This document shows positions 1-56,549 of a stretch of 64,000 nt of DNA, one piece after another (position 1 is the first letter of the stretch; each line of letters starts with the position of its first letter). Where the stretch lies: NCBI RefSeq assembly GCF_963676685.1, contig NC_092344.1, positions 102,114,001 through 102,178,000 on the forward strand, written 5' to 3'. The stretch comes from Mytilus edulis (taxonomy: Eukaryota). Below the pieces are notes generated by a model, which was given only the letters and a program-made list of their open reading frames with translations, was not told where the DNA came from and ran no database searches. Both the position numbers and the translations under genes were made by a program.

Positions 1-208
1 TAAATTTTATCTATCTTTAATCAATTAAAATTCAGATCTCACACTCTGCTCTGTTTTTTTTAGGACAAACTGGTCCAATCAAAATAACAAAGCAGAGTGG
101 GCTTTATTTGAAAATAAATGAATTCCTTTGACCAATCACAAAATTTATTACAAACAATGACAAGGCAGTGTCTTTGTCATCTCTATCACTTCACACAAAA
201 AATGCTTA

Positions 209-492
209 GGGAGCTACCATTTGATTTTTATGGGGGGGCTAGGATGAAATTTGAAAAAAATAGGCAGGACAGGAGTTTTGAGTAAAAAAAAAAGGCAGGA
301 TGAGCAACTTGGTAAAAAAAAAAAGGCAGGATGACAATTTGTGTAAAAAAAGTAAGGATAAACTAGTAAAAAAAAAAGGCAGGACCGAATAGAGTAAAAA
401 ATAAAAAGGCAGGACAGGGATTACAACTAAAAAAAAATGCAGGACAAAATTTTTCATCCTAGCCCCCCCATAAAAATCAAATGGTAGCTCCC
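209..492. mobile_element. MITE, PIF/Harbinger (Tourist)-like
   Basis: ~40-bp TIRs GGGAGCTACCATTTGATTTTTATGGGGGGGCTAGGATGAAA / its reverse complement; TTA on both flanks (206-208, 493-495); internal A-rich GGCAGGA repeats. Confidence 0.85.
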
Positions 493-1665
493 TTAAATAA
501 AAAGGTCATGTAAACATGGTAAAAATGGAAGTTTTACGATAGATTATTTCTTAGTCTGTTTTTAAACTACATATATATATATTTTTAATTTATTTATTGT
601 AATAAATGTAGATGACAGGTTTGTTAATTATGGTTCACTAAGTTGAACACTTCTGATGTAACTTTATCAAGTACCTCCTAAGGATCTTTTCTGCCTAAAT
701 TACTTTAAAGAAAATATGTTTTAGTTAAATGATGTCGTAATTTCCCCTTATTCTGAAAAAGCATGTACATTTACATGAATTGATACATGTGTATATTTAT
801 ACACATAATAAAGTCTATACTGTTCACCTTTCATTTTTTTTTATAGTAACCATAAAAACAGTAAGAAAGCTCTATAAATTACAATGTTAACAGTACAGTG
901 CCACATGTGGAGCAGGACTTACATGTATACATCATGTACATTTTGTACCCTTCCAGAGCACTGGATATCACGTACCCCATGTTTTTGTTTAAGTTTGTGT
1001 TGCTTAGTCTTTAATATGTGTTTTGAGTATTGTTGTCGGTCTGTCTGTTTGTATTATCCTTTTTTAGCCATAATGTTGTCCCTTTGATATCTTTCGCCTC
1101 TCTTCTAGTATAAAGTGATTGATTGTTTAAGTTATACATCCAGTGGCAAGTATTAGAGGAAGAGCAATATTAATTATCAATACAATAGGAAGGTTCTGCA
1201 AGATGTGTTGACCAAGATGCGGGATAAAGGGCTGGAAACTTCGACTGTTACTGGAAAATTGAGAAATGTTTGAGCCTCAGGCTACAACAGGAACCCTGAA
1301 AGATTTAGGAGGCATAGAACTAGAAGGCGTTCACACCTTCCCTTTGATTGGCAAATTTATAAAGTTTTAAACATTAAATCATAAAAATATAGTTGAATCT
1401 CAGTTTCACTTGCCAGTATCATCTTCAGTTTTATGGATTTACGCCCCCATGAGAATAGCAAACAGATTCACCCTTTTATAACAATGTTTTCTTCCAGACT
1501 GCAGATAGTCCAGGGAAGAATGTATAACGATACATATTTCTATACCCCAGTCAACCATAGAGGTTTAATTTTGCAGTGTATACATCATGTACATGTACAC
1601 ATGGTACCACTGTTGTTCAATAGACGTATTTACACTAGTAGTAATTTTGAATATATCTTTCTTAC

Positions 1666-1711
1666 CAACTCCATATTTATGACAAGATTTATTCCATGTA
1701 TTTAATTCCAT
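1666..1711 (-). CDS. First coding exon of a DOCK-A/B family (DOCK3/DOCK4-like) Rac GEF; rest of gene lies left of the window
   Basis: Minus strand ATG GAA TTA AAT ACA TGG AAT AAA TCT TGT CAT AAA TAT GGA GTT G|GTAAGA = MELNTWNKSCHKYGV plus a phase-1 donor. Resembles the recalled W...KYGV N-terminus of DOCK1-5, whose first intron follows KYGV. Lies head-to-head with ZNF277. Confidence 0.72.
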
Positions 1712-2001
1712 CGTAATTTTAACACAACAGTACTGTTTACTTCCGCATTTTGTAAATCCCTCTCATTTGCAATGTCACTGATTCATCAGTTCATTATCAG
1801 TCCATTCTCATTTCACCAACTTTATTTTCGGTACTACACACGATTGCTAATTTTGAAATGGTTTTAATTATTTATATATCGTGAATCTGCCAAATAATTG
1901 TTCACAACAAAGCCGTGTCAGCCAGACAATAACCTGTTAGAAAAATGATGCATACAAATTTTCCAAATTTATTTATAAATTATTCACTGCGGAACTTCAA
2001 G
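1712..2001. promoter_or_regulatory. Putative bidirectional promoter and 5' UTRs between the DOCK-like gene and ZNF277
   Basis: 290 bp between divergent ATGs; ETS-like ACTTCCGC at 1739-1746; YY1-like CAAGATGTC overlapping the ZNF277 ATG. Confidence 0.55.
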
Positions 2002-2038
2002 ATGTCAGCGCCCACTGCAGCTGATTCGACGGTTGCAG
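2002..2038 (+). CDS. ZNF277: ZNF277 exon 1 (MSAPTAADSTVA+G)
   Basis: ATG in CAAGATG context; ends G|gtttca, phase 1, matching exon 2 (G+AA = Glu). Donor is weak and the peptide is not conserved. Confidence 0.7.
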
Positions 2039-2161
2039 GTTTCAACATTTTAACATGTCAAACGATTATATCAAACTTTCAGATTACGTTTATTTGCTCG
2101 ATGTATTATGTTTGCATTGATTCTGTTATTTTTCATGTCTATCTTTTTTTTCACTTTCTGA

Positions 2162-2747
2162 AAGGTTCATGTGGACCCTATGGCTGAAATGGCCGTATTT
2201 TCACCTCAAAATTTACTCTGAATACAGGCAAATCTGTGCATTTGGAAAAGTTTTAAGGCATAGCATGCCCTAGATAAATAGAATTCAAATGCATTGTATG
2301 ATTTAGAAAATTCATAACTTAACTGGATTTTACCGTACACTTTTTTTCGTCCCTGCAGAAGATGATAAAATTAACAAACAGTTGTGTTTACCTTGATATG
2401 GTCCACTCAGGTACACAGTTTAAATAACCAATTATTGTCAGGTATCTATTGTCCATCTCATGTCCATGTCAAACAAAACAGCTCACTTCAATAATTACCT
2501 GTGGGGGAGTTCTCAAACCTGTTTCCTAACTTAGTTTATTTTGGCACCTTCTGGAGGAATGAAAAAAAGTGCACAGAAAAATCCTGGTGAGTTTTTATTT
2601 TTCTAAAACATAAAACATATTTGAAATTTATTTATCTAGGGCATGCTATGCCTGAAAATGTTTACAGATGCACAGATTTGTCTGTACTCAGAGTAAATTT
2701 TGAGGTGAAAATACGGTCATTTTAGCCATAGGGTCCACATGAACCTT
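2162..2747. mobile_element. MITE with long (~200 bp) imperfect TIRs
   Basis: AAGGTTCATGTGGACCCTATGGCT...CACCTCAAAATTTACTCTGA mirrored at 2687-2747; TSD unclear. Confidence 0.85.
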
Positions 2748-2924
2748 AAAGGCTTAGACTGCATCGACAACTCTAGAAGGGGTGAATATATACCTATCTG
2801 AACACCATCTTAGCCCAGTAACATCATCTGTACAAACTTACTACTGGATAAAAGCTGTAAAAAAACATATTCAATTGACTCAACAAAAATTTAAAACTGT
2901 CCACGAGAGGAGTACACACAGATT

Positions 2925-3051
2925 CAGTGGCGGATCCAGAAATTTTCATAAGTGGGGGCCCACTGACTGACCTAAGAGGGGGCCCGCTCCAGTCACGCTT
3001 CAGTGATTCCCTATATAAGCAACCAAATTTTTCCCCCTAAATCCGCCTCTG
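2925..3051. mobile_element. Short CAGTGGCGGAT-type MITE inserted in the LINE 5' ORF
   Basis: TIR CAGTGGCGGAT / ATCCGCCTCTG; AGATT duplicated at 2920-2924 and 3052-3056; same family in reverse orientation at 7612-7745. Confidence 0.8.
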
Positions 3052-3261
3052 AGATTTCCTTGCACGATATGCCAAAAAGCATGTAAAATAGAATCCATAG
3101 CTTGTGACGACTGTGATAAGTGGACACATAGAAACTGCATTGGTATGTCAACATTAGAATACAGCAACCTAGGCAAAAGTGAAGACACATGGACTTGCCC
3201 ATCTTGCTGCAAACCAAACAATTCTTCAACAAAAATATATTTTATACCAAATGGAGATGAC

Positions 3262-4828
3262 AGATAAAGGAAAAAGTCCATACTACACCATGAAGGACAT
3301 AAAAATTAGTACCAACGGAGTCCACAAATTGTTAAAAAACCTGAAACCCCATAAAGCTACTGGTCCCGACTCAATACCAGCCTTTATACTGAAAGCAGCA
3401 GCAGAACAACTTGCTCCGATACTCACAGACCTATACCAAACATCATTGAACACTGGTGAAGTCCCGCAAGATTGGAGAGATGCCAATGTACATGTAGTTC
3501 CACTTTTTAAAAAAGACGAAAGGCACCTAGCATCTAACTACAGACCAGTATCTCTAACTTCCATCACAAGTAAGGTCTTAGAACATATTGTACATAGCTA
3601 CATCATGGACCACTTTGACAAAAATAAAATACTAACTGATGCACAACACGGATTCCGCAAAAGACGATCATGCGAATCTCAACTAATCGTAACCATCAAC
3701 GACATTGCATCAAAATTAAAAAGCAGCGGCCAAGTAGACATCATCCTGCTAGACTTTGCAAAAGCATTTGACAAGGTACCACATCACCGCCTCCTACACA
3801 AGCTGGAATACTATGGCGTCAACCCCAAAACCAATAAATGGATTCGCTCTTTCCTACATAACAGAAAGCAGAGCGTGATATTAGAGGGTGCTGTCTCCTC
3901 ACAAGTACCAGTACTCTCTGGTGTACCCCAAGGCACAGTCCTTGTTCCATTACTGTTCCTGGCCTACATTAACGACATGCCAGAAACAGCATCTACATCA
4001 GAGACCAAATTGTTCGCGGATGACAGCCTACTCTTTCGTACCATCACCAACCAAGCTGACAGTGAACTACTTCAAAAGGACTTAACAGCATTGGAAGACT
4101 GGGAAAACAAATGGCAGATGAGTTTAAATGCCAAAAAATGTCTTGTCATCAGAATATCCCCAAAAAATAGACCAGTGATACAAACATCGTACCAGCTACA
4201 CGGTCATACTCTAGACACAGAGGAAGCAAGTAAATATCTTGGAGTAACCATCAGCAACAACCTAACATGGGATAAACACATAGACAATACAGTAGGCAAA
4301 GGAAACAGAACGTTGGGATTTATACGTAGAAACCTCAAAGGCTGTACAAAACCTGTAAAGGCAGCTGCGTATGTATCCATGGTAAGACCTGCAGTGGAAT
4401 AGGCAAGCACAATATGGGACCCAACCGCCCAAAATAAAATCAAGGCAATTGAACAGGTACAGAAAAGAGCTGCACGATTTGTGAATAACAACTACACAGA
4501 CCGAACACCTGGCTGTGTCACAAATATGGTAAAAAATCTTAAAGGGGAAAGTCTCGAAGAACGGAGGAAAACTAATAGATTATGCATGCTATTTAAGATC
4601 CAGCATGATCTTATAGATATAGACCGTCACCAATTTTTGACCCCAAATGATAACCGGACCAGAGGTAAAAACCGCTTCTTCCAAGAAAGAACAAGTACAG
4701 ACACTTACGGCCAATCTTTCTTCCCAAGGACAATCGGGGACTGGAACAACCTACCAACAACAGTTACAGTGACCAACACCGTTAAGGGATTCAGAGCTGC
4801 CCTGAAGGCATGCTCTGAAAGGAAGTAG
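3262..4828 (+). pseudogene. LINE reverse transcriptase pseudogene
   Basis: Premature stop (VRPAVE*ASTIWDP, Tyr expected), 6-bp CATGTA duplication near 3488, GPLLF changed to VPLLF. Confidence 0.85.
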
Positions 4829-5127
4829 GAAAACCCAGTTGTAAATAATTTTAATTGTATATTTTTGCGAACGTTTAAATGTATTTGTAAATAGCCAAGA
4901 GAAAGCTTTCTGTGTTGCCCGACACTGCGTAAAGTTTTTCGCGCGGAACCATGAACATTCAGCATTGAATCCGGTTCCTTACCTGGAAGAAGAAAAAGAA
5001 GAGGCTGAGGAAAAGACGTTTCGGCCATGGGTCCGGTTCGGCCTTGGTCGTTTCGGCTATGCTTCACTTTGGCCAAAGTGATAAAAGAATTTGTTGTACC
5101 TTCCATAACCCATTTACGATATTTAAT

Positions 5128-8695: not shown

Positions 8696-8885
8696 AAAAA
8701 TTGGTTCTGGAATGCCTCAGTTTATCTCACATTGATGGTGACTCAACTGAATTAAATGACAGAGCTGTCTTCTCTTGTTTATTTTGCAACCAGACTTTTG
8801 ATGAAAAAGATAATGTTCAGAGACACTTGGTGAAAGAACATAAACTAGTGATAGCAGATGTTAATCTCATCAGTCATTTCCAAAG
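8696..8885 (+). CDS. ZNF277: ZNF277 exon 2
   Basis: tttcag|AA AAA TTG...CLFCNQTF..RHLVKEHKLVIADVNLISHFQ AG|gtatca. Confidence 0.93.
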
Positions 8886-17940: not shown

Positions 17941-18005
17941 GGGATTGTTGTTTGATCATATGGCTCATGATCATGGATTTAATGTTGGACTGCCAGACAA
18001 TATAG
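17941..18005 (+). CDS. ZNF277: ZNF277 exon 6
   Basis: ttgcag|G GLLFDHMAHDHGFNVGLPDNI G|gtactt. Confidence 0.93.
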
Positions 18006-20971: not shown

Positions 20972-21389
20972 TCCAAAAGAAGTGTGGTTTGTGAATCAGC
21001 TGTTTTACAAAGTAAAACCTTTAAAATATTTAGTTATGATAACACAATGCTTTTGTTTTCAGTTCCAAAGATTTGATTTGGAAATACTGAAATGATATAA
21101 CTGAAACACTGGACCAGAATTAGTTTATATAAAGCATGTATTGTTTCTGTTATATTGATGAAGAAAAACCAGACTTACATTATTAATTATGATTTAACAG
21201 TCCTGAAAGTCTAAGTTATAAGAAGTGAGGAAGTAAATATATATAATACCGGTAGGTTCTAAAGATTAAATTTCAACCAGCCCAAGCCCCTTGCTCAAGG
21301 GAAAGTTAAGCAAAGCATTTCTATATCAGTTCTAAAATTGTACATATACTGTGTCTAAGAAATAATTTGTCATTTTTATATCTTTTCAG

Positions 21390-21522
21390 TCTGAACTGTT
21401 TATATTGTGAAAAGACATTTAGAGACAGAATTGTTTTAAAAGAGCATATGAGAAAGAAACAACACAGAAAAATTAATCCTAACAATAAAGTTTACGATAG
21501 ATTTTATATGATAAATTATTTG
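21390..21522 (+). CDS. ZNF277: ZNF277 exon 8
   Basis: tttcag|T LNCLYCEKTFRDRIVLKEHMRKKQHRKINPNNKVYDRFYMINYL|gtgagt. Confidence 0.96.
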
Positions 21523-22323: not shown

Positions 22324-22400
22324 GAACTGGGTAAGAATTGGGAGGCTATACAATCAGAAGATGATACTGCCATAGATAATGATGCTGAGTCAGAAAAGGA
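22324..22400 (+). CDS. ZNF277: ZNF277 exon 9
   Basis: tcacag|ELGKNWEAIQSEDDTAIDNDAESEK GA|gtaagt. Confidence 0.93.
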
Positions 22401-23576: not shown

Positions 23577-23676
23577 AGAAGATTACAGTGACTGGGAAGA
23601 AGTAGGGGCCCAGGCTGTTTGTCTGTATTGTGAATTCTCCTCCAGCATACCTGATAAACTTCATGCTCACATGCAG
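23577..23676 (+). CDS. ZNF277: ZNF277 exon 10
   Basis: gtatag|A EDYSDWEEVGAQAVCLYCEFSSSIPDKLHAHMQ|gtaaag. Confidence 0.93.
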
Positions 23677-30089: not shown

Positions 30090-30214
30090 GTGCATCTTGG
30101 TATATGTATTGGATGCCAGGAGAAGTTTGAAGACAGAAAAGCTTTAACAGACCACATGCATGAGAAGGGCCACACACATGTGATACCTGATCTGTTGGCA
30201 TGGGATCAGCCGCA
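30090..30214 (+). CDS. ZNF277: ZNF277 exon 12
   Basis: tttacaag|VHLGICIGCQEKFEDRKALTDHMHEKGHTHVIPDLLAWDQP CA|gtaagt. Confidence 0.93.
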
Positions 30215-44956: not shown

Positions 44957-46012
44957 TAAAATTTCAAGATCTTAAGGAACCAACCATGCTTTCAACTTTG
45001 AGCGATAAACTATGAAGCCTTTTAATGTTTTTATACGTCTGCAAAAAAATTTTTGCGTTCTTATAATGGTATGATGTCGTCTGCGTCGTCGTCCGAAGAC
45101 ACATTGGTGTCCGGACTCCGGACAATAGTTTAACATAGGACCCTATAAAATTACAAGATCTTAAGGAACCAACCATACTTTCAACTTTGAGCGATAAACT
45201 ATGAAGCCTTTTAATGTTTTTATACGTCTGCAAAAAATTTTTTGCGTTCTTATAATGGTATGATGTCGTCTGCGTTGTCGTCCGAAGACACATTGGTGTC
45301 CGGAGTCGGGACAATAGTTTAACATAGGACCCTATGGGAAATGCATACAAATGACTTCTTCTAGAGAACCACTGATTGGAATGAAACCAAACATGACATG
45401 AATGTTCCTTTTGAGGTGTTGACCAAGTGTTGTTACTTTGTAGCCGATCCATCATCCAAGATGGCTGCCAGTGGGGGACTTAGTTTAACATAGGATCCTA
45501 TGGGAAATGCATACAAATGACATCTTCTAGAGAACCACTGAATGGAATGAAACCAAACATAGCATGAATGTTCCTTATGAGATGCTGACCAAGTGTTGTT
45601 ACTTTGTCTCCGATCCATCATCCAAGATGGCTGCCAGCAGGGGGCTTAGTTTAACATAGGACCCTATGGGAAATGCATACAAAAGTCTTCTTCTAGAGAA
45701 CCACGGAATTGAATGAAATCAAACATAGCATGAATAGTTCTTTCTTTATGAGGTGCTGGCGAAGTGTTGTTACTTTGTAGCCAAATTTTATCTGTTTTTA
45801 TAAGATTTCAAAAACCCAAGTAGAGTCAGGTGAGCAATACAGGCTCTTGAGAGACTCTAGTTTTTTGGTGTCAGAAACTTATAGTATGTCAAAAATATGA
45901 TCACAATCCAAATTCAGAGCTGTATCAAGCTTGAATGTTGTGTCCATACTGTCCCAACTGTTCAGGGTTCCACCTTTGCGGTCGTATAAAGCTGCACCCT
46001 GCGGAGAACCTG
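44957..46012 (+). mobile_element. Chimeric or nested HINE-type elements with a 189-bp tandem duplication of the 5' junction
   Basis: Head and final tail resemble 54896-55770. Middle has ~165-bp CATAGGACCCTATGGGAAAT units ending AGGTGAGC..AGGCTC..CTAGTTT. Confidence 0.7.
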
Positions 46013-48573
46013 GTATAATATGCAGTGAAGTTTACTCTTGTACATATTTCTAATGTAACACTAGACAAAATGTTCTTACAATCAGCCAAGGCATTCATAT
46101 ATGCTGCTAAGTTCTAGTAAATCTGATAAATAGGATAGCTTTATACCCTTTAAAAAGTAGACCCTTATAAGGGAAAATACAAAATGAAATAGAGATTATT
46201 AAGTGCAGTTTTTCATAGATGAAGTGGGTCAAATATAATTTGTTGTATATGACTTGGTGATATCTGTTTTTCTATTTGTTTTATCTTACTGTCATCTTTT
46301 GTTCTTGTTGTTTGCTACAGGAAGCCTGAATTCTATAGAAGAGAGCAGTGAAGTGTTTGTAATGTCAAAAATTGGAGGTCTTTTCCTATTGTTACAGTAG
46401 AGAACCTTATCCATTTGTGCAATAGATACTCTACCTAAGTTATCTAAGCTTGATCTATTGATATTAAAATTGCCACCTATAAAACCTTAATTTACAACAA
46501 AACTTTAATATCAACCACATAAAATTAATGTTACAGATCAGATTTCTTACTGGGTGACTTTACGGGTTGACGTGATCCATTCAATATGAGGACAAGTCAA
46601 AAGACATCCACGTAAAAGTAACCAGAGATGGGGTTTAGTAAAAGAAATTCGAGGTTAAGACTTGTCGTCTTTATGTACAGAGCTTGTCATAGTATGATAT
46701 AGCCTGTGTTCATCAAGTTTTCTCCTATAGGACCCTCATTTACATATGAACAAATTCTCACTTTTGATCTTCTACTTATTTTTGTAATAGTGAGCCCTCT
46801 GTCTTCTTAAATCCAGACATTTAATTTCTGTTAAGACTTGGTAAGGTAAATAAAATGACCTAGTATTTTTTGTTGTTTGAAGTTTTATCTGTTGGGATGT
46901 GTATTTTGTTACACCTGTGACTTTAAAGGTTTAGTGCTCACCTGACAAATTAGATTCAAATTAGTCAATTGTTAGGAAGGGCTGAAGAAAAGTTAAGAAA
47001 AAGTGTATTTAATTTGAGTTTGAATATTAACTGTTTTGAAATGTAGTGTGAAGGTTTGGTTGTTATGAGCACACAAAGAGGTCTTGTTTCACTTTTTATC
47101 CATTTAAGCTGTAAGGAATTGATATTTGAAGTAGGTAATCTTGACTCAAATATCAAGAAAGTCATGTTTGTTTGTTTAGTGTAATGGTCATTTGTTTGTT
47201 AAAGTGATACATAAATAACATTCTTTTAGTGTTTCATCATATTATTTTATGGTTGGAAATAACTCTCATTCTAAGTTAATTTAGAGGAAAACATACAATG
47301 TTTTGATTAAAAGCAGGCTCTTTGTTTGGAGGCTGATATATTATTTAAAAGTGGAAAAGAATAATGAAATGCAAACATCAGTAATGACATAGTTCGGAGT
47401 AATAAGAACTGCAGGAATCATGGTTTTATGATATAAAAACAAGGAAAATTAAAACTCTATGAAAACATATGTGAAAAGATTTTTTTCATTTAACCCTTTA
47501 TATATTTTTGTCTTTGATTTACAAAAGAGAACTTTTTATTTTCCTAGAGTATTTGACATTTAAATTTGTTTAGGACTCGAGGTACAGGAAATTGTTTTTA
47601 GTTATATATCAATTTTTGGAGAATCATTTCATGAATATAATTATATACATGTATCTTTATAAATTTTATGAATAAAACTTATTAAAAGGAGATATTTGGT
47701 TTTAAAATGTCAATGAGAAAACCACACATTAAAAGCCAAAAAAAAAACCCAAATGCACTGTAGTACTCCTAGATAGTACTGGTTTGTAAGATATGATATA
47801 CATATTTCATAGTCCCAATGCCAAAAGTTCAAGTACTATCAAAGCATCAGTAGCCTTGGGGTATTAGCACCTAAAGACATCTTATCGTATCAATTATGAT
47901 GTGTGGTACACCATAGCAGTCGCTAACAAAAATATAGCAAACATATACCGTGCTTTAATAAATAGCTTCAGGTTTTATATAACAAAGAATCTCCCGAACT
48001 TGATGATGGGTGACACATATTTTGTCAGACCACAAAATCTGATAATTATTTAAATTGATGCATTATTCAAATCAATAACTTTTTGTACGTCTCAGTATTC
48101 GTCATAGTAACATTATGTTGATTGTATGGGGTAAATTCTTGTTTAATAAATTCTGTTAGATCAAGCAAAAAGAGGGAAATTAGTTTTTGATTTAATGTAA
48201 ACTTCCCATATCACCTGTATATCAATATAATTTTATGATCCGTGTTTGTCAAAATATGTTCGATTTCAAATTGATAACTGAGTAGATGAATGCAGTCTTT
48301 TTATTATTGTATTCATAAGATCATGTCTATGTGTTTTCTCAGGATTTAATTTTTATTTATTAGTCCATGGAGCTCATAAGGATTGAATGGATCTGTTATT
48401 AAAATTTGAAAATTAAATGTTGTAAAATGATTACATAGATAAATGTAATTAAAATATTTTTTCCAGATCTAGCCAAAACTGCTCTGTATTTTTTATAAGT
48501 GGGTATTAAACAGGATACACAAATTTCTGCTGGAGTTCATTTAAATATGGAACCTTTTTTAGATGACTTGAAA

Positions 48574-49511
48574 TTTTTAACCGGATTTTTGTGACAAAAA
48601 TGTCGGTTATTGATTTGGGGATGTACGGCGGGCGGGCGGTCGGGCGGGCGGGCGGCAATCAAATGTTGTCCGTGCATTAACTTATGAACCGTTCAACCAA
48701 AGCTTTTAAAATTTTAATATGTTGTTACTGACAACTAAATGAAGGTCAAGTTCAATAATGGCGATTTTGACTTTTACCGTTCAGGAGTTATGGTTCTTGA
48801 AAGATTGAAAAATGGAGTTTCCAGTCGTTTTCGTGCATTTACGCATGAACTGTTCTACCTAAGCTTCCCAAATTTTAATATGTTGTTACTGATGACAAAA
48901 TGGAGGTCAAGTTCAATAATGGCGATTTTGACTTTTACCGTTCAGGAGTTATGGTTCTTGAAAGATTGAAAAATGGAGTTTCCAGTCGTGTCCGTGCATT
49001 TACGCATGAACTGTTCTACCTAAGCTTCCCAAATTTTAATATGTTGTTACTGATGACAAAATAGAAGTCAAGTTCAATAATGACGATTTTGACTTTTACC
49101 GTTCAGGAGTTATGGTTCTTGAAAGATTGAAAAATGGTGTTACCAGTCGTGTCCGTGCAATTTCTCATGAACCATTCAACCAAAGCTTTTGAAATTTTTA
49201 TATGTTGTTACTGATGGCAAATTAGAGGTCAAGTTCAATAATGATGATTTTGACTTTTACCGTTCAGGAGTTGTGGTTCTTGAAAGATTGTGAAATGGCG
49301 TTTCCATTCACGTTGTTGCATTTACTCATGAACCATTCAATCTAAGCTTTTCAAATTTTAAGATGTTGATACTGATGACAAAATGGAGGTCAAATTTGAT
49401 ATTGACGATTTTCACTTTCACCATTCATCAGTAATGGTTCTTGTGATATTGCCAGGACACAAATAAATATTAATAAATCCGGTTTGCTGTCGTTGTGACA
49501 GCCTCTTGTTT
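48574..49511 (+). mobile_element. HINE-type element, copy 2 of the 31439-32715 family
   Basis: Same termini, (GGCG)n and ~160-bp units; fewer units. Confidence 0.85.
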
Positions 49512-49699
49512 ATTTGTGTTTTGACATTTTTTTAAATCAATGTTTTTGAAAAAGTTTGAATGGCAAGTCTGTTATATCATAAACTTTCAAAAACTAATCA
49601 AGAATAAAATGTACTACTGACCGTACTAGAGATGTATCTCTGAATGACTGTCATGAACATTTACCACCATAAATTACAATAACACCATTGTCCCACTGA

Positions 49700-50462
49700 C
49701 ATATTAGTATAAGTAACACTGTTTCTATCTCTCAACCCATAAACACTATGTAGCAGAGACATATCTGTGTCAAATTTCACTGATTCAATTCCAAAACACA
49801 CGAACACAATTTAACAGTGACAAATCTATAACAATTGCAGTGATACTATTTCTGAACACTTAAACACTATGTTGTAGTGATACTATTTCTAAACACATAA
49901 ACACTACCGGGATATGTTACAGTGACAAATCTGTAACAATTGCAGTGATACTATTTCTAAATACATAAACACTACCGGGATATGTTACAGGGACATGTCT
50001 ATTACAGTTGCAGTGATACTATTTCTAAATACATAAACACTATGGTACAGTGACATATCGGTATCAAAATGCATTGATACAATTTCTAAGCACAAATAAC
50101 AGTGGCATATCAGTATCAAATTGTAGTTATACTATTTCTGAACACTTAAACACTATGTTGCAGTGATTCTATTTCTAAGCACATAAACACTACCGGGATA
50201 TGTTACAGTGACATATCTATTACAATTACAGTGATTCTATTTCTAAACACATAAACACTACTGGGATATGTATTTATTACAATTGTAGTAATACTATTTC
50301 TAAACACATAAACACTATGTTACAGTGACATATCATATCAGTATCAAAATGCATTGATACAATTTCTAAACACACAAACACAATGTTATAGTGACATATC
50401 TTTTACAATTGCAGTGATACTATTTCTAAATACATAAACACTATGTTGCAATAACATATCTG
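49700..50462. repeat. Degenerate modular minisatellite (~50-60 bp)
   Basis: TGCAGTGATACTATTTCTAAACACATAAACACTA..GTTACAGTGACATATC repeated more than 10 times. Confidence 0.8.
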
Positions 50463-50784
50463 TATAGTTATTAATAATGAACGGTGTCCTTGTTTGTGAT
50501 TCATTTGACCTTGAAATCTCATTCACAGATCATTGATAATGTGAAGTATATGTGATATCTTTACTTAGACCTTCATCTCAAAGATTTTCATCATAAAACT
50601 TAAGTATAACCTGCAAAGTATGTGAAACATTCAGTGATTAACTAATTTTCAAGCAGTGTTTATAATTTATCTAAGAAGGCTTAGATAATGTCTTTACTTT
50701 ATTAAAATCAAGTGTCTTGGTTTTTCAGTAAAATTATCAACAACTGATATGCATTAATCATTACTGATATTTCCATTTTTGCAG

Positions 50785-50977
50785 GTATTTCTTCCCAACA
50801 TATGAAAATGACAACTTATTATGTCAGCTTGAAGATGATGACAACGATCAACAGATGAATAAAGATGGCAGCACTACTAGTTGCCATGGTAATGTGACTG
50901 TGATAGCAGAAGACAACCCTGTAGAAAACACAATCTTAACAGATGAGAAACTGAGACGTGAAATACTAATGTCATAG
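50785..50977 (+). CDS. ZNF277: ZNF277 exon 13 (terminal, to TAG)
   Basis: ttgcag|G YFFPTYENDNLLCQLEDDD...VTVIAED...ILTDEKLRREILMS*. Confidence 0.94.
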
Positions 50978-52932
50978 TTCAAAATGGAGATGTTCAGATA
51001 ATTCTTACTGTGATATTAATTACTGAAAAAATGTTACTATGCACATACATAGTTGAATACAAGTGTATATATATTGGTGTTATTTAATGCATTAAAATTG
51101 AAATTGACCCATATCTCTAATTTCTGAGAGTGAAAACTGTGCTCTCTGAGGCAAGATTTAAGAAGAGGGGTTGATTCACAAACAGCAATTTTCATTTATG
51201 TCAAAGAAGGGGATATATTTACACCCTGTCCCACTTGTATGCTGATCTGAATAACACACTTTGAGTCACCATTTGATTGACTTTTGACTACTATTTCTTA
51301 TTGATTCCAGAAGTTGCTTCATTTGCATTGTAAAAAATGATTTCTATTGACTGCTGAGACTAATGTTTATCATCATTGCAGAATTTCTGAAAAGGGCTAG
51401 GAAAATCAACAAAATGTAAACTTCATTGGAAAATAGTGTGTCAAAATAGTTTGTGTCTGTGGTATTTTTATGTTGAGTTTGTCTTTTATAATTAGGAAAC
51501 AAAAGAAATACTTTGTGTTATGTAATATTTTAGAAAATTCAAGCTCTAAATACTATCAATAACATCAATAACTCCTACAAGGAATTTGAATCCTAAACTA
51601 TTGTATATAACAGAGATTCTGAATGTGGGCATGTATTCTTAGCTGCCTATGAATGTAAGAATAAGAAGATTTGGTAAGATTGCTAATGATTAACTAACCA
51701 CAAGAGAACAGAGACAAATGTCAACAACGAGCAAAACCTATACCATATAGCAAGCCGACCTATTAACTGTCAAAGTGTTGTTCTCATTGAAAAACAAAAA
51801 TAACTTATGTTGGATCTATGTGCTGGTTCAATAAGTTTTGCCTCAATTGTGTAACTGTGTCTTGTAAATACAGTTTGCTCTGCATCTGCATTGTCAACAC
51901 AATTCTTCTAACAAGATTATTGTAAATAGAATCTAGGTCTTGCATTGTTTGATTTTTTATAAATATATATAGATGTTCATGGGAGTAAATTGTTGATTTG
52001 TCCCTTTACTTTTTAAAGATTTATGCTGTTTGAACTCCAAAATGTCTTATATGTCCAGCACCAGCATGTGACATGTTAAAGTATGACGTCTACATGAAAC
52101 CACTGGACTGGTATATCCTGATATACATATGTGCATGGGAGATGTTATTCTGGTCAATTGAGCTTTCCCTTTGTTATACCTTTAAGCTTGTAAGTTTGGA
52201 GCATGTCTAACACCCACCTTGCCATTGTGTTTGTTCTTGTATTGTAATGTTTTTTACAGGAAACGTGGTACATTGTCAGATTCTAATACACAGGTTAACA
52301 TGTGAGTAGCAAGTGCTGATTCATTTAGTTCCCAAGTGAGTTTTTATCCTGTTCGAAATTTATTTGCCATTAAAAATTGCATATCCTGTTAATCATATCT
52401 ACATGAGACTAATTAAATTAACTCTATGCATTTGGGTAGAATGCTCTATTGAAGTTATGAAAACCGGAGTCAAACCTTCATATCGAACATGTGCAGTTCT
52501 CTATACTATTGCAGCTTATACCCTTATAGGTTAAGTTATATGTGGAACCTCTCTCTATTTGATATGACTTCATTAATGAGAGGAGGATTTTCGTAGATGA
52601 AATGCTTCACTATTATTTAGGACAAAGTAAATCATTGTCGTTTCATTACAAGGAACTTGTTTGACATTTCTGTAAAATTATCTTCTAGATGTCTCAGATC
52701 TTCAATGCCAGTTTCAGACATCTAGATCTGTGATGTTGAAAATTACTATTGGTCCCATGTTTAATCATCTTCATCAAACGTATTGCAAATGTAAAGTAAT
52801 GCCAAAACATTGATAATTTTGTCAACATCGACGCAGAACAAATGTATAAAAGCTTTGGTTTGTATATGATCTGTTTACACGCGTTCTTAGGGTGATCTAT
52901 TGTTGTTTTTATAATGTAAATCTTTCATATTA

Positions 52933-52938
52933 AATAAA
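52933..52938 (+). terminator. Candidate polyadenylation signal for ZNF277
   Basis: AATAAA about 2 kb after the stop, ending a largely repeat-poor stretch; an ATTAAA at ~51091 is an alternative. Confidence 0.3.
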
Positions 52939-54895
52939 CCACATTACCAAACATTTTCAAATGATTTCTGTAAACATTCTTTAATCTTATTTAACCTATT
53001 AAGTCATGAAGTATTACAGATGGTTCGTTTTGATTACTTATTTAAATCGTTAATGAAGAAAACTAGTCTTGCCCTCGGTTAAGATATACTGTAAATGGTC
53101 TATTGTAAGGTATCTTGTTAACCTTTTTGAAAGAAGATTTGCATGGACGGGTTGGAGGTCATCTTTGTTTCCTCAAAATATTTATTAAAACAGGTTAGAT
53201 AAACATAAGTTTAAGATGGCAAAACCGATAGCTTTGTAACGATTTTTTAGAAATTTTAAATCCTTGCCTTATTCGTAACATCGCAACCATGACGGTGATA
53301 AAATTATCTCCATATCATTGGAAAATTTAATCCCTTTTCTGAACAATTGAGTTTAAAGTAGTTTTGTTGATCGGATGGATGCGTCTTCTATCCCAAATAA
53401 GTATGAGAAAAGGAATGTTTCTCTATGTAACAAGCGGGTTAAGTAGTTTGACAATTGCTGAAGAGAAACATGATACATGCATTCAGATTCTATAGAATAA
53501 TGCACCCAATGGGGCATGGGCAACTATGTAATGAGAAAATTATATATTGGATCAGCATTTGGTGGTCTTTTTAATTTCTTTGGCCATCTACAAAACGTTT
53601 GAAAATTTGTCAATGGTTGGACCACTTAAATATTGATATCTAGTGTTTATGCATATTGTTGAGGTATAATGTAACCTAAGTTATTTATTAGGTCATCAGA
53701 TGAATGGTGTCCTCTATACAACGTTCTGGGTTTTTTGTCCAAAGACATTTGCGCCTCTCTGAAATTGTAGAGTAGAAATATTGTAGGAATGTGTATCTAT
53801 AATGTAATAATGTCACTTAATCAAACAATACTATGTTTTCTTTAAACATTAGATTATAATTTACATGAAAATCGTTTCGAGCTTGAAAGAATCTTAAAGT
53901 ACTATGAATTACGACTAATCCAAAAATCAAATAAAAATTTGAAACAAATTTAGCTGACTAATTTTTCATATTAAATATATAACATATTGAACTAGATTTT
54001 AAGTTCTTAATCATGTAAACAGCAGAGTATATGATAATATACATATACCCGTAACAATAACGCCCACCTAACTTATTTTTATTTTTTGACTCAGTAGAGG
54101 ATAAGACATAATTATAAATTCAGTACAAAGTTGTAGATAATATGATGTAAGGTTACATCTTATTGTTCAATGTTAATTTTTACAGATAAACGTCTTTGTG
54201 TCCGTATTTGTTTAATACAATGGTTGTATGATACAACAGCCCATTCATAGTGAAGCCTGAATGTTATGAACATGTATGATTCATTTATTGTATAGACAAA
54301 TTACCATACTGAAAAGTATCCTCGTTTCATTTAGTGATTTTTTTTTCGAAAAATTAAAGAAAATATTTAGTGTCATGAGTGTTATATTTTTAGAATCATC
54401 GCTATCTTTAAGGGAAAGAAAGTAGAATCACTAAAATACTGAACTCCGAGGAAAATATAAAACGGAAAGTCCCTAATCAAAGGGCAAAATCAAAAGCTTA
54501 AAAGCACATCAAACGAATGAATAACAACTGTCATATTCCTGACTTGGTACAGGCATTTTCTTATGTAGAAAAAGGTGGATTGAACCTGGTTTTATAGCTA
54601 GCTTAACCTCTCACTTGTGTGACAGTCGCATCAAATTCCATTAAATTGACAACGATACGTGAACAAAACAAATAGACATAATAGATAAAAATGTCAATAA
54701 TACAGCAGTCAACATTGTGCTATAATCCTAATCACAAAAAAACTGGTGACATAAAAACATGCAACAAAGAAGCACAAAATGGCATACAGACCCACGGGCT
54801 TCGGTCACAATTTGTCCACAAGATATGCAAGTGGTTGTTCTGTGCAGCTTTCAATGGTTGCCTCATACTAATGATAATGTATGTAATCTGTTGGT

Positions 54896-55770
54896 TTTTA
54901 TACGACCGCAAAAAAAAATTATGGGACCGTATAATGGTATGATGTCGTCCGAAGACACATTTGGTTTCCGGACAATAACTTTAGTTTATGAAATTATGTG
55001 AATGGATCTCTATGAAATTTAATAAGATGGTTCAATACCACAAAGGGAAGGTTGAGATTGATTTTGGGGATGCTGGTTCCAATCGTTTAGGAATTAGGGG
55101 CCCAAAGGGGGACCAAAACAAACATTTTTCTACTTTCAGGATAATAACTTGTGTATAAGTATTTCAATTGCTCTGATATTATACCACAATATTTAATACA
55201 ACAAATAGAAGGTTTGGATTCATTTTGGGGGTTATGGTGCCAATAGTTTAGGAATTAAGGGCCAAAAAGGGGCCAAAAACAAGCAGGCCAATAACTTGTG
55301 TGGATTCATTTTGGGGGTTATGGTGCCAACAGTTTAGGAATTAAGGGCCAAAAAGGGGCCAAAAACAAGCAGGCCAATAACTTGTGTTTAAGAGTATGGA
55401 TCTCTATGAAGTTGTACTACAAGACACCATACTACAAAGGCTGGGATTGAGTGTAGGGGTAATTGCTCAAAGGGAGGATTCAAAAAGTTTGGGGGTTCCA
55501 ATTTTTTTAAGAGGTTCATTATTTTTTTTCTCAAAATTTTTCGAATTTCAAATTTTTGATTTCAAGAAGAATCTTTAATTGCACAGTATTGCAAAATAGA
55601 TTTGTAAGATCTTGTCATTTATTTTGTGTCAGAAACCTATACTATGTCAAAATTTGATCACAATCCAAATTCAGACAGTATCAAGATTAAATATTGTGTC
55701 CAAATTTGGCCCTGCTGTTCAGGGTTTAACCCCTGCGGTTGTATCAGGCTGCGCTCAGCGAAGCAATTTA
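54896..55770 (+). mobile_element. HINE-type element with internal GGAATTA.GGGCCAAAAAGGGG repeats
   Basis: TTTTATACGACCGC start; GCGGTTGTAT subterminal inverted copy and 3' GC hairpin; ~84-bp internal tandem duplication. Confidence 0.7.
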
Positions 55771-56432
55771 TTTTACTAGATATCAAGGATTTATGATTAA
55801 CATACAACACACGTCCTTATTGGTATACATATATTTCCGTCTTGGTAAATGTATTGCTTAAATGTGTCAAAACATCAATAATTCTAAAACCTACATCAGC
55901 ATATTTATCTTCTATAATTATGATGTTGCATTCACGACCAATCAGACAACATAACATACAATACAGATGCTGCCACGCGGTAATGCGGTCATGTAAGTTT
56001 GTAATGTTGCAAGATTGTTACAAGACAAGGAAGGGGTGGTGCCAGCAAGAATATTTAACCCCACCATTTTCTGTAGGTGCCTGTTCCAACTCAGGAGCCC
56101 GTAATTCACTGGTAATCGTTTGTTGCTGTATATCATGTTCGTTTTTCTCTTTGCTTTGTATATACATTAGGCAGTTGGTTTTCTGGTTTGGATTGTTTTA
56201 CGTTTGTCATATCGGGCCTTTTATAGCTTACTATGCAGTATTAGTTTTGGTCATTGTTGAAGGCCGTACGGTGACCCATAGTTGTTACATTCTATTTAAT
56301 GTAGCCTCTTCTTTGGCGATCATACCAAATGTTATTTTGATAATTAAGCAATATGCCAAGATTTAAATCGCCCAATAATGTGATACTTAAATTGGAATCC
56401 ATGTCATCTGCAACGAAAGTATGATTTAGGAG

Positions 56433-56549
56433 CACAGGCACTCGTCTCGGAATTTTTTTTTATATACGTTTATATAACACCTTTTTATATAACACAAGGT
56501 GTTATATAAAGGTATATAGGACATTTTTTTTCTGAGACGAGTGCCTGTG
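56433..56549. mobile_element. Small palindromic MITE
   Basis: CACAGGCACTCGTCTC / GAGACGAGTGCCTGTG; flanks TTTAGGAG / TTTAGGAT (7/8). Confidence 0.8.

What the first reader, a model, noticed from the sequence alone, without database searches (positions are those of the whole stretch)
1666..2038. DOCK-like gene and ZNF277 head-to-head: possible ancient bidirectional gene pair
Seen: a hidden 46-nt minus-strand exon MELNTWNKSCHKYGV|GTAAGA whose ATG is 290 bp from the ZNF277 ATG, with ETS-like and YY1-like motifs between. Known: human DOCK4 (MWIPTEHEKYGV, first intron after KYGV, recalled) is divergently paired with ZNF277 at 7q31.1. Inference: the pair and its shared promoter may predate the protostome-deuterostome split, implying long-conserved co-regulation of a Rac GEF and a zinc finger protein.
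Basis: partly seen in the sequence, partly recalled or inferred. Interest (0 to 1): 0.8.

Follow-up and report, generated by a model that had tools for sequence, protein, structure and literature searches.

The report
Mussel DOCK4-like and ZNF277 head-to-head
In a mussel genome the first exons of a DOCK3/4-type Rac activator gene and of the zinc-finger gene ZNF277 lie back to back within about 300 bases, as the human DOCK4 and ZNF277 genes do, so this is probably one more ancient conserved divergent gene pair, though neither a shared promoter nor co-regulation is shown.

Summary
The minus-strand ATG at window 1711 opens a 46-nt coding stretch (MELNTWNKSCHKYGV + G) that ends at 1666. One long transcript contig in each of four runs splices exactly from 1666 to an SH3 exon 1.9 kb further left, in phase 1.

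The exon is not hidden. It is the first exon of the public RefSeq model "dedicator of cytokinesis protein 4-like" of Mytilus edulis. That protein maps at about 100% identity over more than 106 kb on the minus strand.

In a maximum-likelihood tree it sits in the protostome Sponge/"DOCK3" clade, apart from DOCK1/2/5. A second mussel gene on contig C4 is the DOCK1-type copy.

On the plus strand, eight exons between 2002 and 50977 form a ZNF277 orthologue.

Human DOCK4 and ZNF277 are a published head-to-head pair with a bidirectional promoter. Shared ancestry of the linkage is therefore the likeliest reading.

Not shown:
- The ZNF277 transcription start.
- A shared promoter or co-expression.

The "intergenic" 290 bp is DOCK 5'UTR. 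The human ZNF143 site is absent, and the ETS-like motif occurs at chance frequency. Verdict: a probable new member of a known kind, of modest interest.

The parts
1666..1711 (-). Coding part of exon 1 of the DOCK-B (DOCK3/4/Sponge-type) gene: MELNTWNKSCHKYGV plus the first base of the next codon
   Evidence: Translation. Identical to residues 1-15 of P0157, the RefSeq M. edulis DOCK4-like protein. A spliced joint at 1666 is seen in 4 runs.
1712..2000 (-). 5'UTR of the DOCK-B first exon, with seven upstream ATGs. Transcribed sequence continuous with exon 1 reaches window 2000 in run X1, 1955 in X3, 1920 in X7 and 1853 in X2
   Evidence: Table 8 (window coordinate = L017 coordinate minus 1200). 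Contig ends are not transcription starts.
1664..1665 (-). GT donor of DOCK-B intron 1. The intron is 1,926 nt and its acceptor lies outside the window at C1:102113740-41
   Evidence: Joint 939->2866 on L017 with ends CT..AC, which is GT..AG on the minus strand. Sequence.
1..1663 (-). Part of DOCK-B intron 1. Exon 2 (SH3 start, A-VVNYDPIRPEFLSLSVGDVVHIIEEYGSGNT) lies 261-355 nt left of the window start, at about C1:102113739-102113646
2002..2038 (+). Putative first coding exon of ZNF277 (MSAPTAADSTVA plus G). It is inferred, not confirmed by reads; in-frame ATGs at 1945 and 1948 are alternative starts
   Evidence: ATG, GT donor at 2039, and a phase-1 fit to exon 2 (G + AA = Glu).
8696..8885 (+). 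ZNF277 exon 2, carrying the first C2H2 finger
   Evidence: Splice sites read. zf-C2H2_2 is the best Pfam family (22 bits).
17941..18005 (+). ZNF277 exon (…DHMAHDHGFNVGLPDNI)
   Evidence: tblastn with P0305, P0308 and P0313. Splice sites.
21390..21522 (+). ZNF277 exon with the best-conserved finger (CLYCEKTFRD…RFYMINYL)
   Evidence: Pfam PF12756: 35-38 bits, over the cut-off. It is 72-85% identical to PF12756 fragments, including mammalian ones.
22324..22400 (+). ZNF277 exon (ELGKNWEAIQSEDD…)
   Evidence: Collinear tblastn match to P0305 and P0311. Splice sites.
23577..23676 (+). ZNF277 exon with a C2H2 finger (CLYCEFSS…HAHMQ)
30090..30214 (+). ZNF277 exon with a C2H2 finger (CIGCQEKFED…HEKGH)
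   Evidence: Pfam zf-C2H2_2 at 26.7 bits. Also.
50785..50977 (+). Last coding exon of ZNF277 (YFFPTYENDNLLC…), ending in TAG
   Evidence: tblastn with P0311. Acceptor and stop codon.

Best explanation
Window 1666-2038 holds the abutting 5' ends of two real, divergently transcribed genes of Mytilus edulis.

Leftwards on the minus strand runs the single mussel DOCK-B gene, the orthologue of fly Sponge and vertebrate DOCK3/DOCK4, which is a Rac exchange factor. Its first exon is at least 335 nt long: a 289-nt 5'UTR followed by 46 coding nt. It splices in phase 1 to an SH3 exon 1.9 kb away.

Rightwards on the plus strand runs the single-copy zinc-finger gene ZNF277. It occupies 2002-50977, and its first exon is inferred at 2002-2038.

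Human DOCK4 and ZNF277 have the same 5'-to-5' arrangement. The linkage is therefore most likely inherited from the last common ancestor of protostomes and deuterostomes. That would make it a conserved ancestral microsyntenic pair of the divergent type.

The likely mechanism is inferred, not shown. With the two 5' ends this close or overlapping, both genes would depend on one short promoter region, so any breakpoint that separates them would damage at least one of them.
For: Shown:
- The exon 1 to exon 2 splice is present in long contigs of 4 runs.
- P0157, the RefSeq DOCK4-like protein of M. edulis, comes from a contig of 126,317,657 nt, the length of the window's contig. It begins with this exon and maps collinearly at about 100% from window 1711 to C1:102009670.
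- Pfam DOCK_N and DOCK-C2 match exons to the left on the minus strand.
- Exon 2 finds the DOCK1 SH3 structure as its best hit.
- In the tree, the mussel protein sits inside the protostome 'DOCK3/spg' clade (support 100). DOCK1/2/5 form a separate clade (support 100).
- The other SH3-DOCK gene, on C4, matches chordate DOCK1/2/5 three to five times better than the C1 gene does.
- Sponge is the DOCK3/4 orthologue according to PMC3026809.
- The ZNF277 exons are collinear with mammalian fragments, whose Atlas neighbours are named ZNF277. zf-C2H2_2 is the best family on four exons.
- ZNF277 is single-copy across bilaterians according to PMC2889900.
- The human pair is head to head (PMC4169542) and has a functional bidirectional promoter (PMC3082894).

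Inferred: two unrelated single-copy genes being 5'-to-5' neighbours within 1 kb in both species by chance has odds of roughly 1 in 10,000 or less per pair. Hundreds of such conserved pairs, most of them 5'-5', are known (PMC3514665).
Against: - Only two lineages were compared, so independent juxtaposition is unlikely but not excluded.
- The tree holds no vertebrate DOCK3 or DOCK4. The class rests on the Sponge clade, the literature and the RefSeq names.
- The ZNF277 start site and exon 1 have no read support here.
- DOCK transcript sequence runs up to 1-2 nt from the ZNF277 ATG. The two 5' ends may therefore overlap rather than flank an untranscribed shared promoter.
- No Staf/ZNF143 site was found.
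- The ETS-like motif is at chance frequency.
- CpG observed/expected at 1700-2199 is 1.02, which is only the top 8% of the window.
- No expression comparison of the two genes was made.
Confidence: 0.8

Rival explanations
1. The linkage is ancestral, but it is not kept together by a shared promoter. It persists either passively, because a gap of about 0-300 nt offers almost no harmless breakpoint, or because regulatory elements of one gene lie in the long introns of the other (a regulatory-block or bystander arrangement).
For: - No conserved promoter motif was found.
- The 290 nt are DOCK 5'UTR.
- Both genes have long introns: DOCK-B spans more than 106 kb and ZNF277 about 49 kb.
- Regulatory blocks are the other known cause of conserved pairs (PMC3514665).
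- In human carriers, a deletion in one gene did not change expression of the other (PMC4169542).
Against: - In human cells, one Staf/ZNF143 site drives both directions of the DOCK4-ZNF277 promoter in reporter assays (PMC3082894).
- Neither gene is a classic developmental transcription-factor target of a regulatory block.
Confidence: 0.35
2. The same two genes became head-to-head neighbours independently in the mussel and vertebrate lineages, so the arrangement is convergent or coincidental.
For: - Only two lineages were compared.
- The scan looks at very many windows, so some coincidental shared adjacencies are expected genome-wide.
Against: - Both genes are single-copy in the mussel.
- The match covers orientation as well as sub-kilobase spacing.
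- Chance odds for a given pair are about 1 in 10,000 or less (inference).
- Hundreds of truly conserved pairs exist.
Confidence: 0.07
3. Exon 1 at 1666-2000 is only one of several alternative DOCK first exons, or ZNF277 really starts elsewhere. In that case the tight pairing of start sites is an artefact of choosing these two exons.
For: - The RefSeq cluster of P0157 holds 32 isoforms.
- ZNF277 exon 1 is unverified.
- Alternative in-frame ATGs lie at 1945 and 1948.
Against: - The same junction appears in all four runs laid, in contigs of 2.3-3.2 kb.
- Both Mytilus proteins whose sequences were read, M. californianus isoform X5 and M. edulis isoform X6, start with this exon.
- ZNF277 exon 2 has no ATG and begins in phase 1, so an upstream coding exon is required.
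Confidence: 0.12

Closest known systems
Human DOCK4-ZNF277 bidirectional gene pair at 7q31.1
   Same: The gene families are the same (DOCK-B exchange factor and ZNF277) and the 5'-to-5' orientation is the same. The spacing is under 1 kb in both: the human pair is listed among head-to-head pairs with starts less than 1 kb apart (PMC3082894; PMC4169542).
   Different: - The human promoter carries a Staf/ZNF143 site that acts in both directions. No such site is in the mussel window at up to 3 mismatches.
- The mussel region is AT-rich (32-34% G+C) and only mildly CpG-undepleted.
- The mussel has one DOCK-B gene, whereas vertebrates have DOCK3 and DOCK4 and only DOCK4 is paired. That last point is from my own knowledge and was not tested.
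Conserved ancestral microsyntenic pairs (CAMPs) of Irimia et al. 2012 (PMC3514665)
   Same: The two genes are unrelated, closely linked in distant animal lineages and in the 5'-5' orientation that dominates CAMPs. The proposed cause, shared cis-regulation, is the same.
   Different: CAMP status requires conservation in at least four major lineages, and only two are documented here. Whether this pair is already in their list could not be checked, because the supplement is not held.
Drosophila Sponge (CG31048), the fly DOCK3/4 orthologue
   Same: The domain plan is the same: SH3, DHR-1, DHR-2 and a proline-rich tail. The mussel protein falls in the same clade in the tree.
   Different: Whether fly spg lies next to the fly ZNF277 orthologue CG9890 was not determined here.

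Membership tests
DOCK-B subfamily (DOCK3 / DOCK4 / Sponge) | N-terminal SH3 domain directly after a short '…KYGV' leader | tested here: met
   - Exons 1-4 encode MELNTWNKSCHKYGV-A-VVNYDP…GWFRG…GIFPKMYIH.
- The best solved-structure hit of exon 2 is the DOCK1 SH3 domain, 2m0y.
- SH3 Pfam families are recorded for P0157.
- This feature is shared with DOCK-A, so it does not separate the two classes.
DOCK-B subfamily (DOCK3 / DOCK4 / Sponge) | DOCK_N, DHR-1 (C2) and DHR-2 domains in one gene | tested here: met
   - DOCK_N matches at C1:102095275-430 and DOCK-C2 at C1:102070194-322, both on the minus strand.
- The C2 exon is 63% identical to human DOCK1 DHR-1.
- Exon-level searches with two of the three DHR-2 lobe families (A and C) missed this gene. 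However, P0157, which carries all three lobes, maps at about 100% through residues 1221-1783.
DOCK-B subfamily (DOCK3 / DOCK4 / Sponge) | Groups with DOCK3/DOCK4/Sponge and not with DOCK1/2/5 in a tree | tested here: met
   - 28 proteins, 1,734 columns, LG+C20 model. The mussel protein sits within bivalves, molluscs and then the protostome 'DOCK3/spg' clade (support 100). A cnidarian DOCK3-like protein joins that clade at 87. Chordate DOCK1/2/5 plus a beetle protein form the other clade (support 100).
- Caveat: no vertebrate DOCK3 or DOCK4 sequence was available. Equating Sponge with DOCK3/4 comes from PMC3026809 and from RefSeq names.
- The C4 gene takes the DOCK-A slot.
DOCK-B subfamily (DOCK3 / DOCK4 / Sponge) | Long proline-rich C-terminal tail | tested here: met
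   The P0157 tail holds several PxxP stretches, such as PPLPPRR, PPPIPS and PPPPIPQRP, read. The tail's own exons lie left of the DNA that was fetched.
DOCK-B subfamily (DOCK3 / DOCK4 / Sponge) | Rac-directed exchange activity and ELMO binding | not testable with these tools
   This needs biochemistry.
ZNF277 (single-copy bilaterian C2H2 protein) | zf-C2H2_2 (PF12756) fingers; five C2H2 fingers in all | tested here: inconclusive
   - PF12756 is the best family on four exons, over its cut-off on one of them.
- Four complete CxxC…HxxxH fingers were read.
- A fifth is seen only as its His half, at 17941-18005. Its Cys half was not mapped.
ZNF277 (single-copy bilaterian C2H2 protein) | Collinear similarity to recognised ZNF277 proteins | tested here: met
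   - Five window exons match mammalian fragments P0305 and P0311 in order, at 44-79% identity.
- Atlas neighbours of P0305 are clusters named 'zinc finger protein 277', scoring 0.93-0.95.
- This is indirect evidence. No full-length named ZNF277 could be fetched, because exon-sized queries cannot reach 450-residue proteins.
ZNF277 (single-copy bilaterian C2H2 protein) | One copy per genome | tested here: met
   PF12756 finds only this locus and one other gene, at C2:92.74 Mb, which was not examined; it may be the ZNF622-type family that carries the same domain. The single-copy status in four bilaterians comes from PMC2889900.
Conserved divergent (bidirectional-promoter) gene pair / CAMP | Two unrelated genes, 5'-to-5', with starts less than 1 kb apart | tested here: inconclusive
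   Orientation and the 290-nt ATG-to-ATG distance are met. DOCK transcript sequence reaches window 2000. The ZNF277 transcription start is not mapped.
Conserved divergent (bidirectional-promoter) gene pair / CAMP | Linkage present in four or more major animal lineages | not tested
- Linkage is documented only for the mussel (this work) and human.
- The gene names were not found in the supplements of PMC2871058 or PMC11676430.
- The supplement of PMC3514665 is not held.
Conserved divergent (bidirectional-promoter) gene pair / CAMP | Shared regulatory element or co-expression | tested here: not met
   - The Staf/ZNF143 consensus has 0 matches at up to 3 mismatches.
- The ETS-like heptamer is at chance frequency.
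- The CpG signal is weak.
- Co-expression was not tested.

The most novel reading that the evidence does not exclude
The DOCK-B/ZNF277 divergent pair is an ancestral bilaterian unit, possibly older, held together for more than 550 million years because the two genes use one core promoter. Their 5' ends would abut or overlap: in the mussel the DOCK 5'UTR runs right up to the ZNF277 start codon. After the vertebrate genome duplications only the DOCK4 copy would have kept the partner. If so, the human autism- and language-linked DOCK4-ZNF277 interval would carry a regulatory coupling far older than vertebrates.
Probability: 0.3. Interest if true: 0.55.

Novelty: new member of a known kind. Interest (0 to 1): 0.35.

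Why it matters
Deeply conserved pairs of unrelated genes are rare evidence that gene order is under selection. This pair involves DOCK4 and ZNF277, which flank a human interval studied for autism and language impairment.

If the linkage holds across phyla, three things follow:
- Structural variants at the human locus should be read with both genes in mind.
- The mussel locus becomes a compact natural version of the promoter to dissect.
- It would show that only the DOCK4 copy kept the partner after duplication.

As it stands, the finding is a well-supported annotation plus a plausible, untested evolutionary inference. The mussel gene models themselves are already public.

Tried and rejected
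**Closed or limited tools**
No synteny survey was possible.
- The protein Atlas could not read a new exon sequence. A stored mammalian homologue was used instead.

**Searches with limited or no return**
- The word search with a ZNF277 exon returned only unnamed fragments of 72-142 residues. This was expected from the length filter.
- The second word search, with abalone DHR-2, listed only protostome proteins, and the solved structures hold no DOCK3 or DOCK4. The tree therefore has no vertebrate DOCK3/4.
- Exon-level Pfam searches with DHR-2 lobes A and C missed this gene.
- The direct ORF comparison of the C1 and C4 loci was swamped by shared repeats.
- The Staf/ZNF143 site search gave no match.
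- The sigma-70 and terminator scan does not apply to an animal genome and was ignored.
- The supplements searched did not name the pair.

**Reading rejected**
- That the KYGV leader marks DOCK4 specifically. It is common to DOCK-A and DOCK-B.

Searches were made exon by exon, and the public proteins returned by the tools stood in for the spliced product.
- No human contig was fetched.
- The window holds no N.

Full report
**Where the window lies.** The window is G000:C1:102114001-102178000, in a 1.37-Gb genome with 14 large contigs. A public protein named [quoted passage not shown] (P0157) is recorded on a contig of 126,317,657 nt, exactly the length of C1. The genome is therefore taken to be the blue mussel. 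The window contains no N.

**The observation.**
- On the minus strand an ATG at 1711 opens MELNTWNKSCHKYGV. After one more base (G, at 1666) comes GTAAGA.
- On the plus strand an ATG at 2002 opens MSAPTAADSTVA plus G, followed by GT at 2039.
- 290 nt separate the two ATGs, so the description is accurate.

**Is the minus-strand exon used?**
- Exon 2 was found 1.9 kb further left, just outside the window. It follows the acceptor tttcag|CT at C1:102113739. The G of exon 1 plus CT gives Ala, followed by VVNYDPIRPEFLSLSVGDVVHIIEEYGSGNT. Its best solved-structure match is the SH3 domain of DOCK1.
- Reads were laid on a 5,800-nt stretch covering both exons (L017; window coordinate = L017 coordinate minus 1200). 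One contig of 2.3-3.2 kb in each of four runs joins L017 939 to 2866. It skips 1,926 nt whose ends are GT..AG on the minus strand.
- One of the runs is recorded as RNA; the other three are guessed to be RNA. The splice itself argues for RNA.
- This is exactly the predicted junction from window 1666.
- The same contigs continue upstream of the ATG to window 2000, 1955, 1920 and 1853. The first exon is therefore at least 335 nt, and the whole "intergenic" 290 nt is DOCK 5'UTR. That UTR holds seven upstream ATGs.
- Contig ends are set by the assembly graph, so they are lower bounds for the transcript and not start sites.

**The gene to the left.**
- Pfam DOCK_N and DOCK-C2 match minus-strand exons 19 kb and 45 kb from the ATG.
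- A 42-residue C2 exon was searched against the 1.8-billion-protein library. Exon-sized queries cannot reach 2,000-residue proteins in the word search, which is why the large search was used. It returned a 2,079-residue M. californianus protein at 98% identity, named DOCK4-like.
- The word search with that protein returned P0157 of M. edulis. Its first residues are identical to exons 1-4 here.
- P0157 maps collinearly at about 100% from window 1711 to C1:102009670, covering residues 1-1783 over more than 106 kb.
- The exon is therefore not hidden. It is the first exon of the public gene model.
Searches were made exon by exon, and public proteins stood in for the product.

**DOCK3/4-type or DOCK1-type?**
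- The genome has two SH3-DOCK genes, this one and one at C4:54.19 Mb. Two further DOCK genes, at C3:62.04 Mb and C1:120.65 Mb, showed no DOCK_N match.
- The N-terminal 640 residues of chordate DOCK1, DOCK2-like and DOCK5 proteins give 370-460 bits in 8-10 exon matches on C4. On C1 they give only 90-128 bits. Mollusc "DOCK3-like" proteins show the reverse.
- A maximum-likelihood tree was built from 28 full-length or near-full-length proteins and 1,734 columns. It puts the mussel protein within bivalves, then molluscs, then a protostome clade that includes proteins named Sponge (support 100). A jellyfish DOCK3-like protein joins at 87. Chordate DOCK1/2/5 plus a beetle protein form a separate clade (support 100).
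- Sponge is the fly DOCK3/4 orthologue and Mbc is the DOCK-A member (PMC3026809).
- Vertebrate DOCK3 and DOCK4 sequences could not be obtained, so this last link rests on the literature and on RefSeq names.
- The KYGV leader is shared by DOCK-A and DOCK-B and proves nothing about the class.
- The Mytilus protein is fast-evolving: it is 46% identical to the oyster orthologue and sits on a long branch.

**The gene to the right.**
- PF12756 (zf-C2H2_2) matches window 21382-21513.
- That exon is 72-85% identical to PF12756 fragments from many animals, including two mammals.
- Those fragments match five window exons in order. All five have good splice sites, and the last ends in a stop at 50977.
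- Together with exon 2 at 8696, an exon at 30090 and the inferred first exon at 2002, this gives eight exons between 2002 and 50977.
- Atlas neighbours of the wolverine fragment are clusters named zinc finger protein 277.
- zf-C2H2_2 is the best Pfam family on four exons.
- ZNF277 is a single-copy, five-finger gene in human, fly, worm and Daphnia (PMC2889900).
- Exon 2 (8696-8885) has no ATG and begins in phase 1. The stretch 2002-2038 ends in phase 1, and the join gives Glu.
- That first exon remains an inference. No read evidence was obtained, and in-frame ATGs at 1945 and 1948 could be used if transcription starts further left.

**Comparison with human.**
- DOCK4-ZNF277 is one of the pairs whose bidirectional promoter was tested. 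Mutation of its single Staf/ZNF143 site lowered expression in both directions (PMC3082894).
- Two unrelated genes, each single-copy in the mussel, being 5'-to-5' neighbours within 1 kb in both a mollusc and a mammal is very unlikely by chance. My estimate is 1 in 10,000 or less for a given pair.
- Nearly 600 conserved pairs of this kind, most of them 5'-5', are already described (PMC3514665).
- Inheritance from the protostome-deuterostome ancestor is thus the best reading, but it rests on two lineages.
- The supplements searched either did not name the pair or are not held.

**Promoter.** Nothing supports a conserved shared element.
- The Staf/ZNF143 consensus has no match at up to three mismatches.
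- CGGAAGT at 1739-1745 occurs at chance frequency.
- CpG observed/expected is 1.02 at 1700-2199 against a window median of 0.41, but one window in twelve does as well.
- DOCK transcript sequence reaches the ZNF277 start codon. The two 5' ends therefore abut or overlap, rather than flanking an untranscribed spacer.

**Verdict.**
- The gene identities and the head-to-head arrangement are supported.
- The antiquity of the pair is probable but under-sampled.
- A shared promoter and co-regulation are untested.
- This is a probable new member of a known kind, built on gene models that are already public.

Noticed in passing
window 2160-2750: A foldback (MITE-like) element starts 124 nt after the putative ZNF277 exon 1. 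Its arms are near-perfect inverted copies. At least 40 copies at 96-98% identity are spread over all large contigs.
   Followed up: partly
window 200-480 (L017 1400-1680): A palindromic element in DOCK intron 1. Inverted ends (GGGGGGCTAGGATGAAA … TTTCATCCTAGCCCCCCC) enclose tandem A-rich 'GGCAGGA' units. Summed depth in the transcript-contig runs is very high, up to about 170,000, so it belongs to an abundant, transcribed repeat family.
   Followed up: no
window 2875-3068 and L017 971-1164: Two more short repeat pieces have very high summed depth in the RNA-type runs (about 45,000-57,000 in X1) and many loose ends at their borders.
   Followed up: no
window about 3060-5000, + strand: A LINE-type reverse-transcriptase reading frame lies in ZNF277 intron 1. 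It shows …YRPVSLTS…, FADD and a Cys/His-rich head.
   Followed up: no
window 1712-2000, - strand: The DOCK 5'UTR carries seven upstream ATGs with open frames of 2-11 codons. This suggests translational control.
   Followed up: partly
window 1945-1950, + strand: Two in-frame ATGs lie 57 and 54 nt before the ZNF277 ATG at 2002, just after a stop codon. The true start codon depends on where transcription begins.
   Followed up: partly
G000:C4:54192375-54271000 (+); C3:62.04 Mb (-); C1:120.65 Mb (-): The genome holds four DOCK genes. C4 is DOCK1/Mbc-type. The genes on C3 and at C1:120.65 Mb matched DOCK-C2 and DHR-2 but not DOCK_N, so they may be the other two classes; this was not tested.
   Followed up: partly
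L013-L016 (C1:102052000-102064800) and C4:54182500-54190000, 54205400-54206400, 54218700-54220000: Introns of both SH3-DOCK genes share long blocks of the same tandemly structured repeat at 75-100% identity. These swamped a direct comparison of the two loci.
   Followed up: no
P0157 / P0001 versus P0159: The Mytilus DOCK-B protein is unusually diverged. It is 46% identical to the oyster orthologue and has a stem branch of 0.51 in the tree.
   Followed up: no
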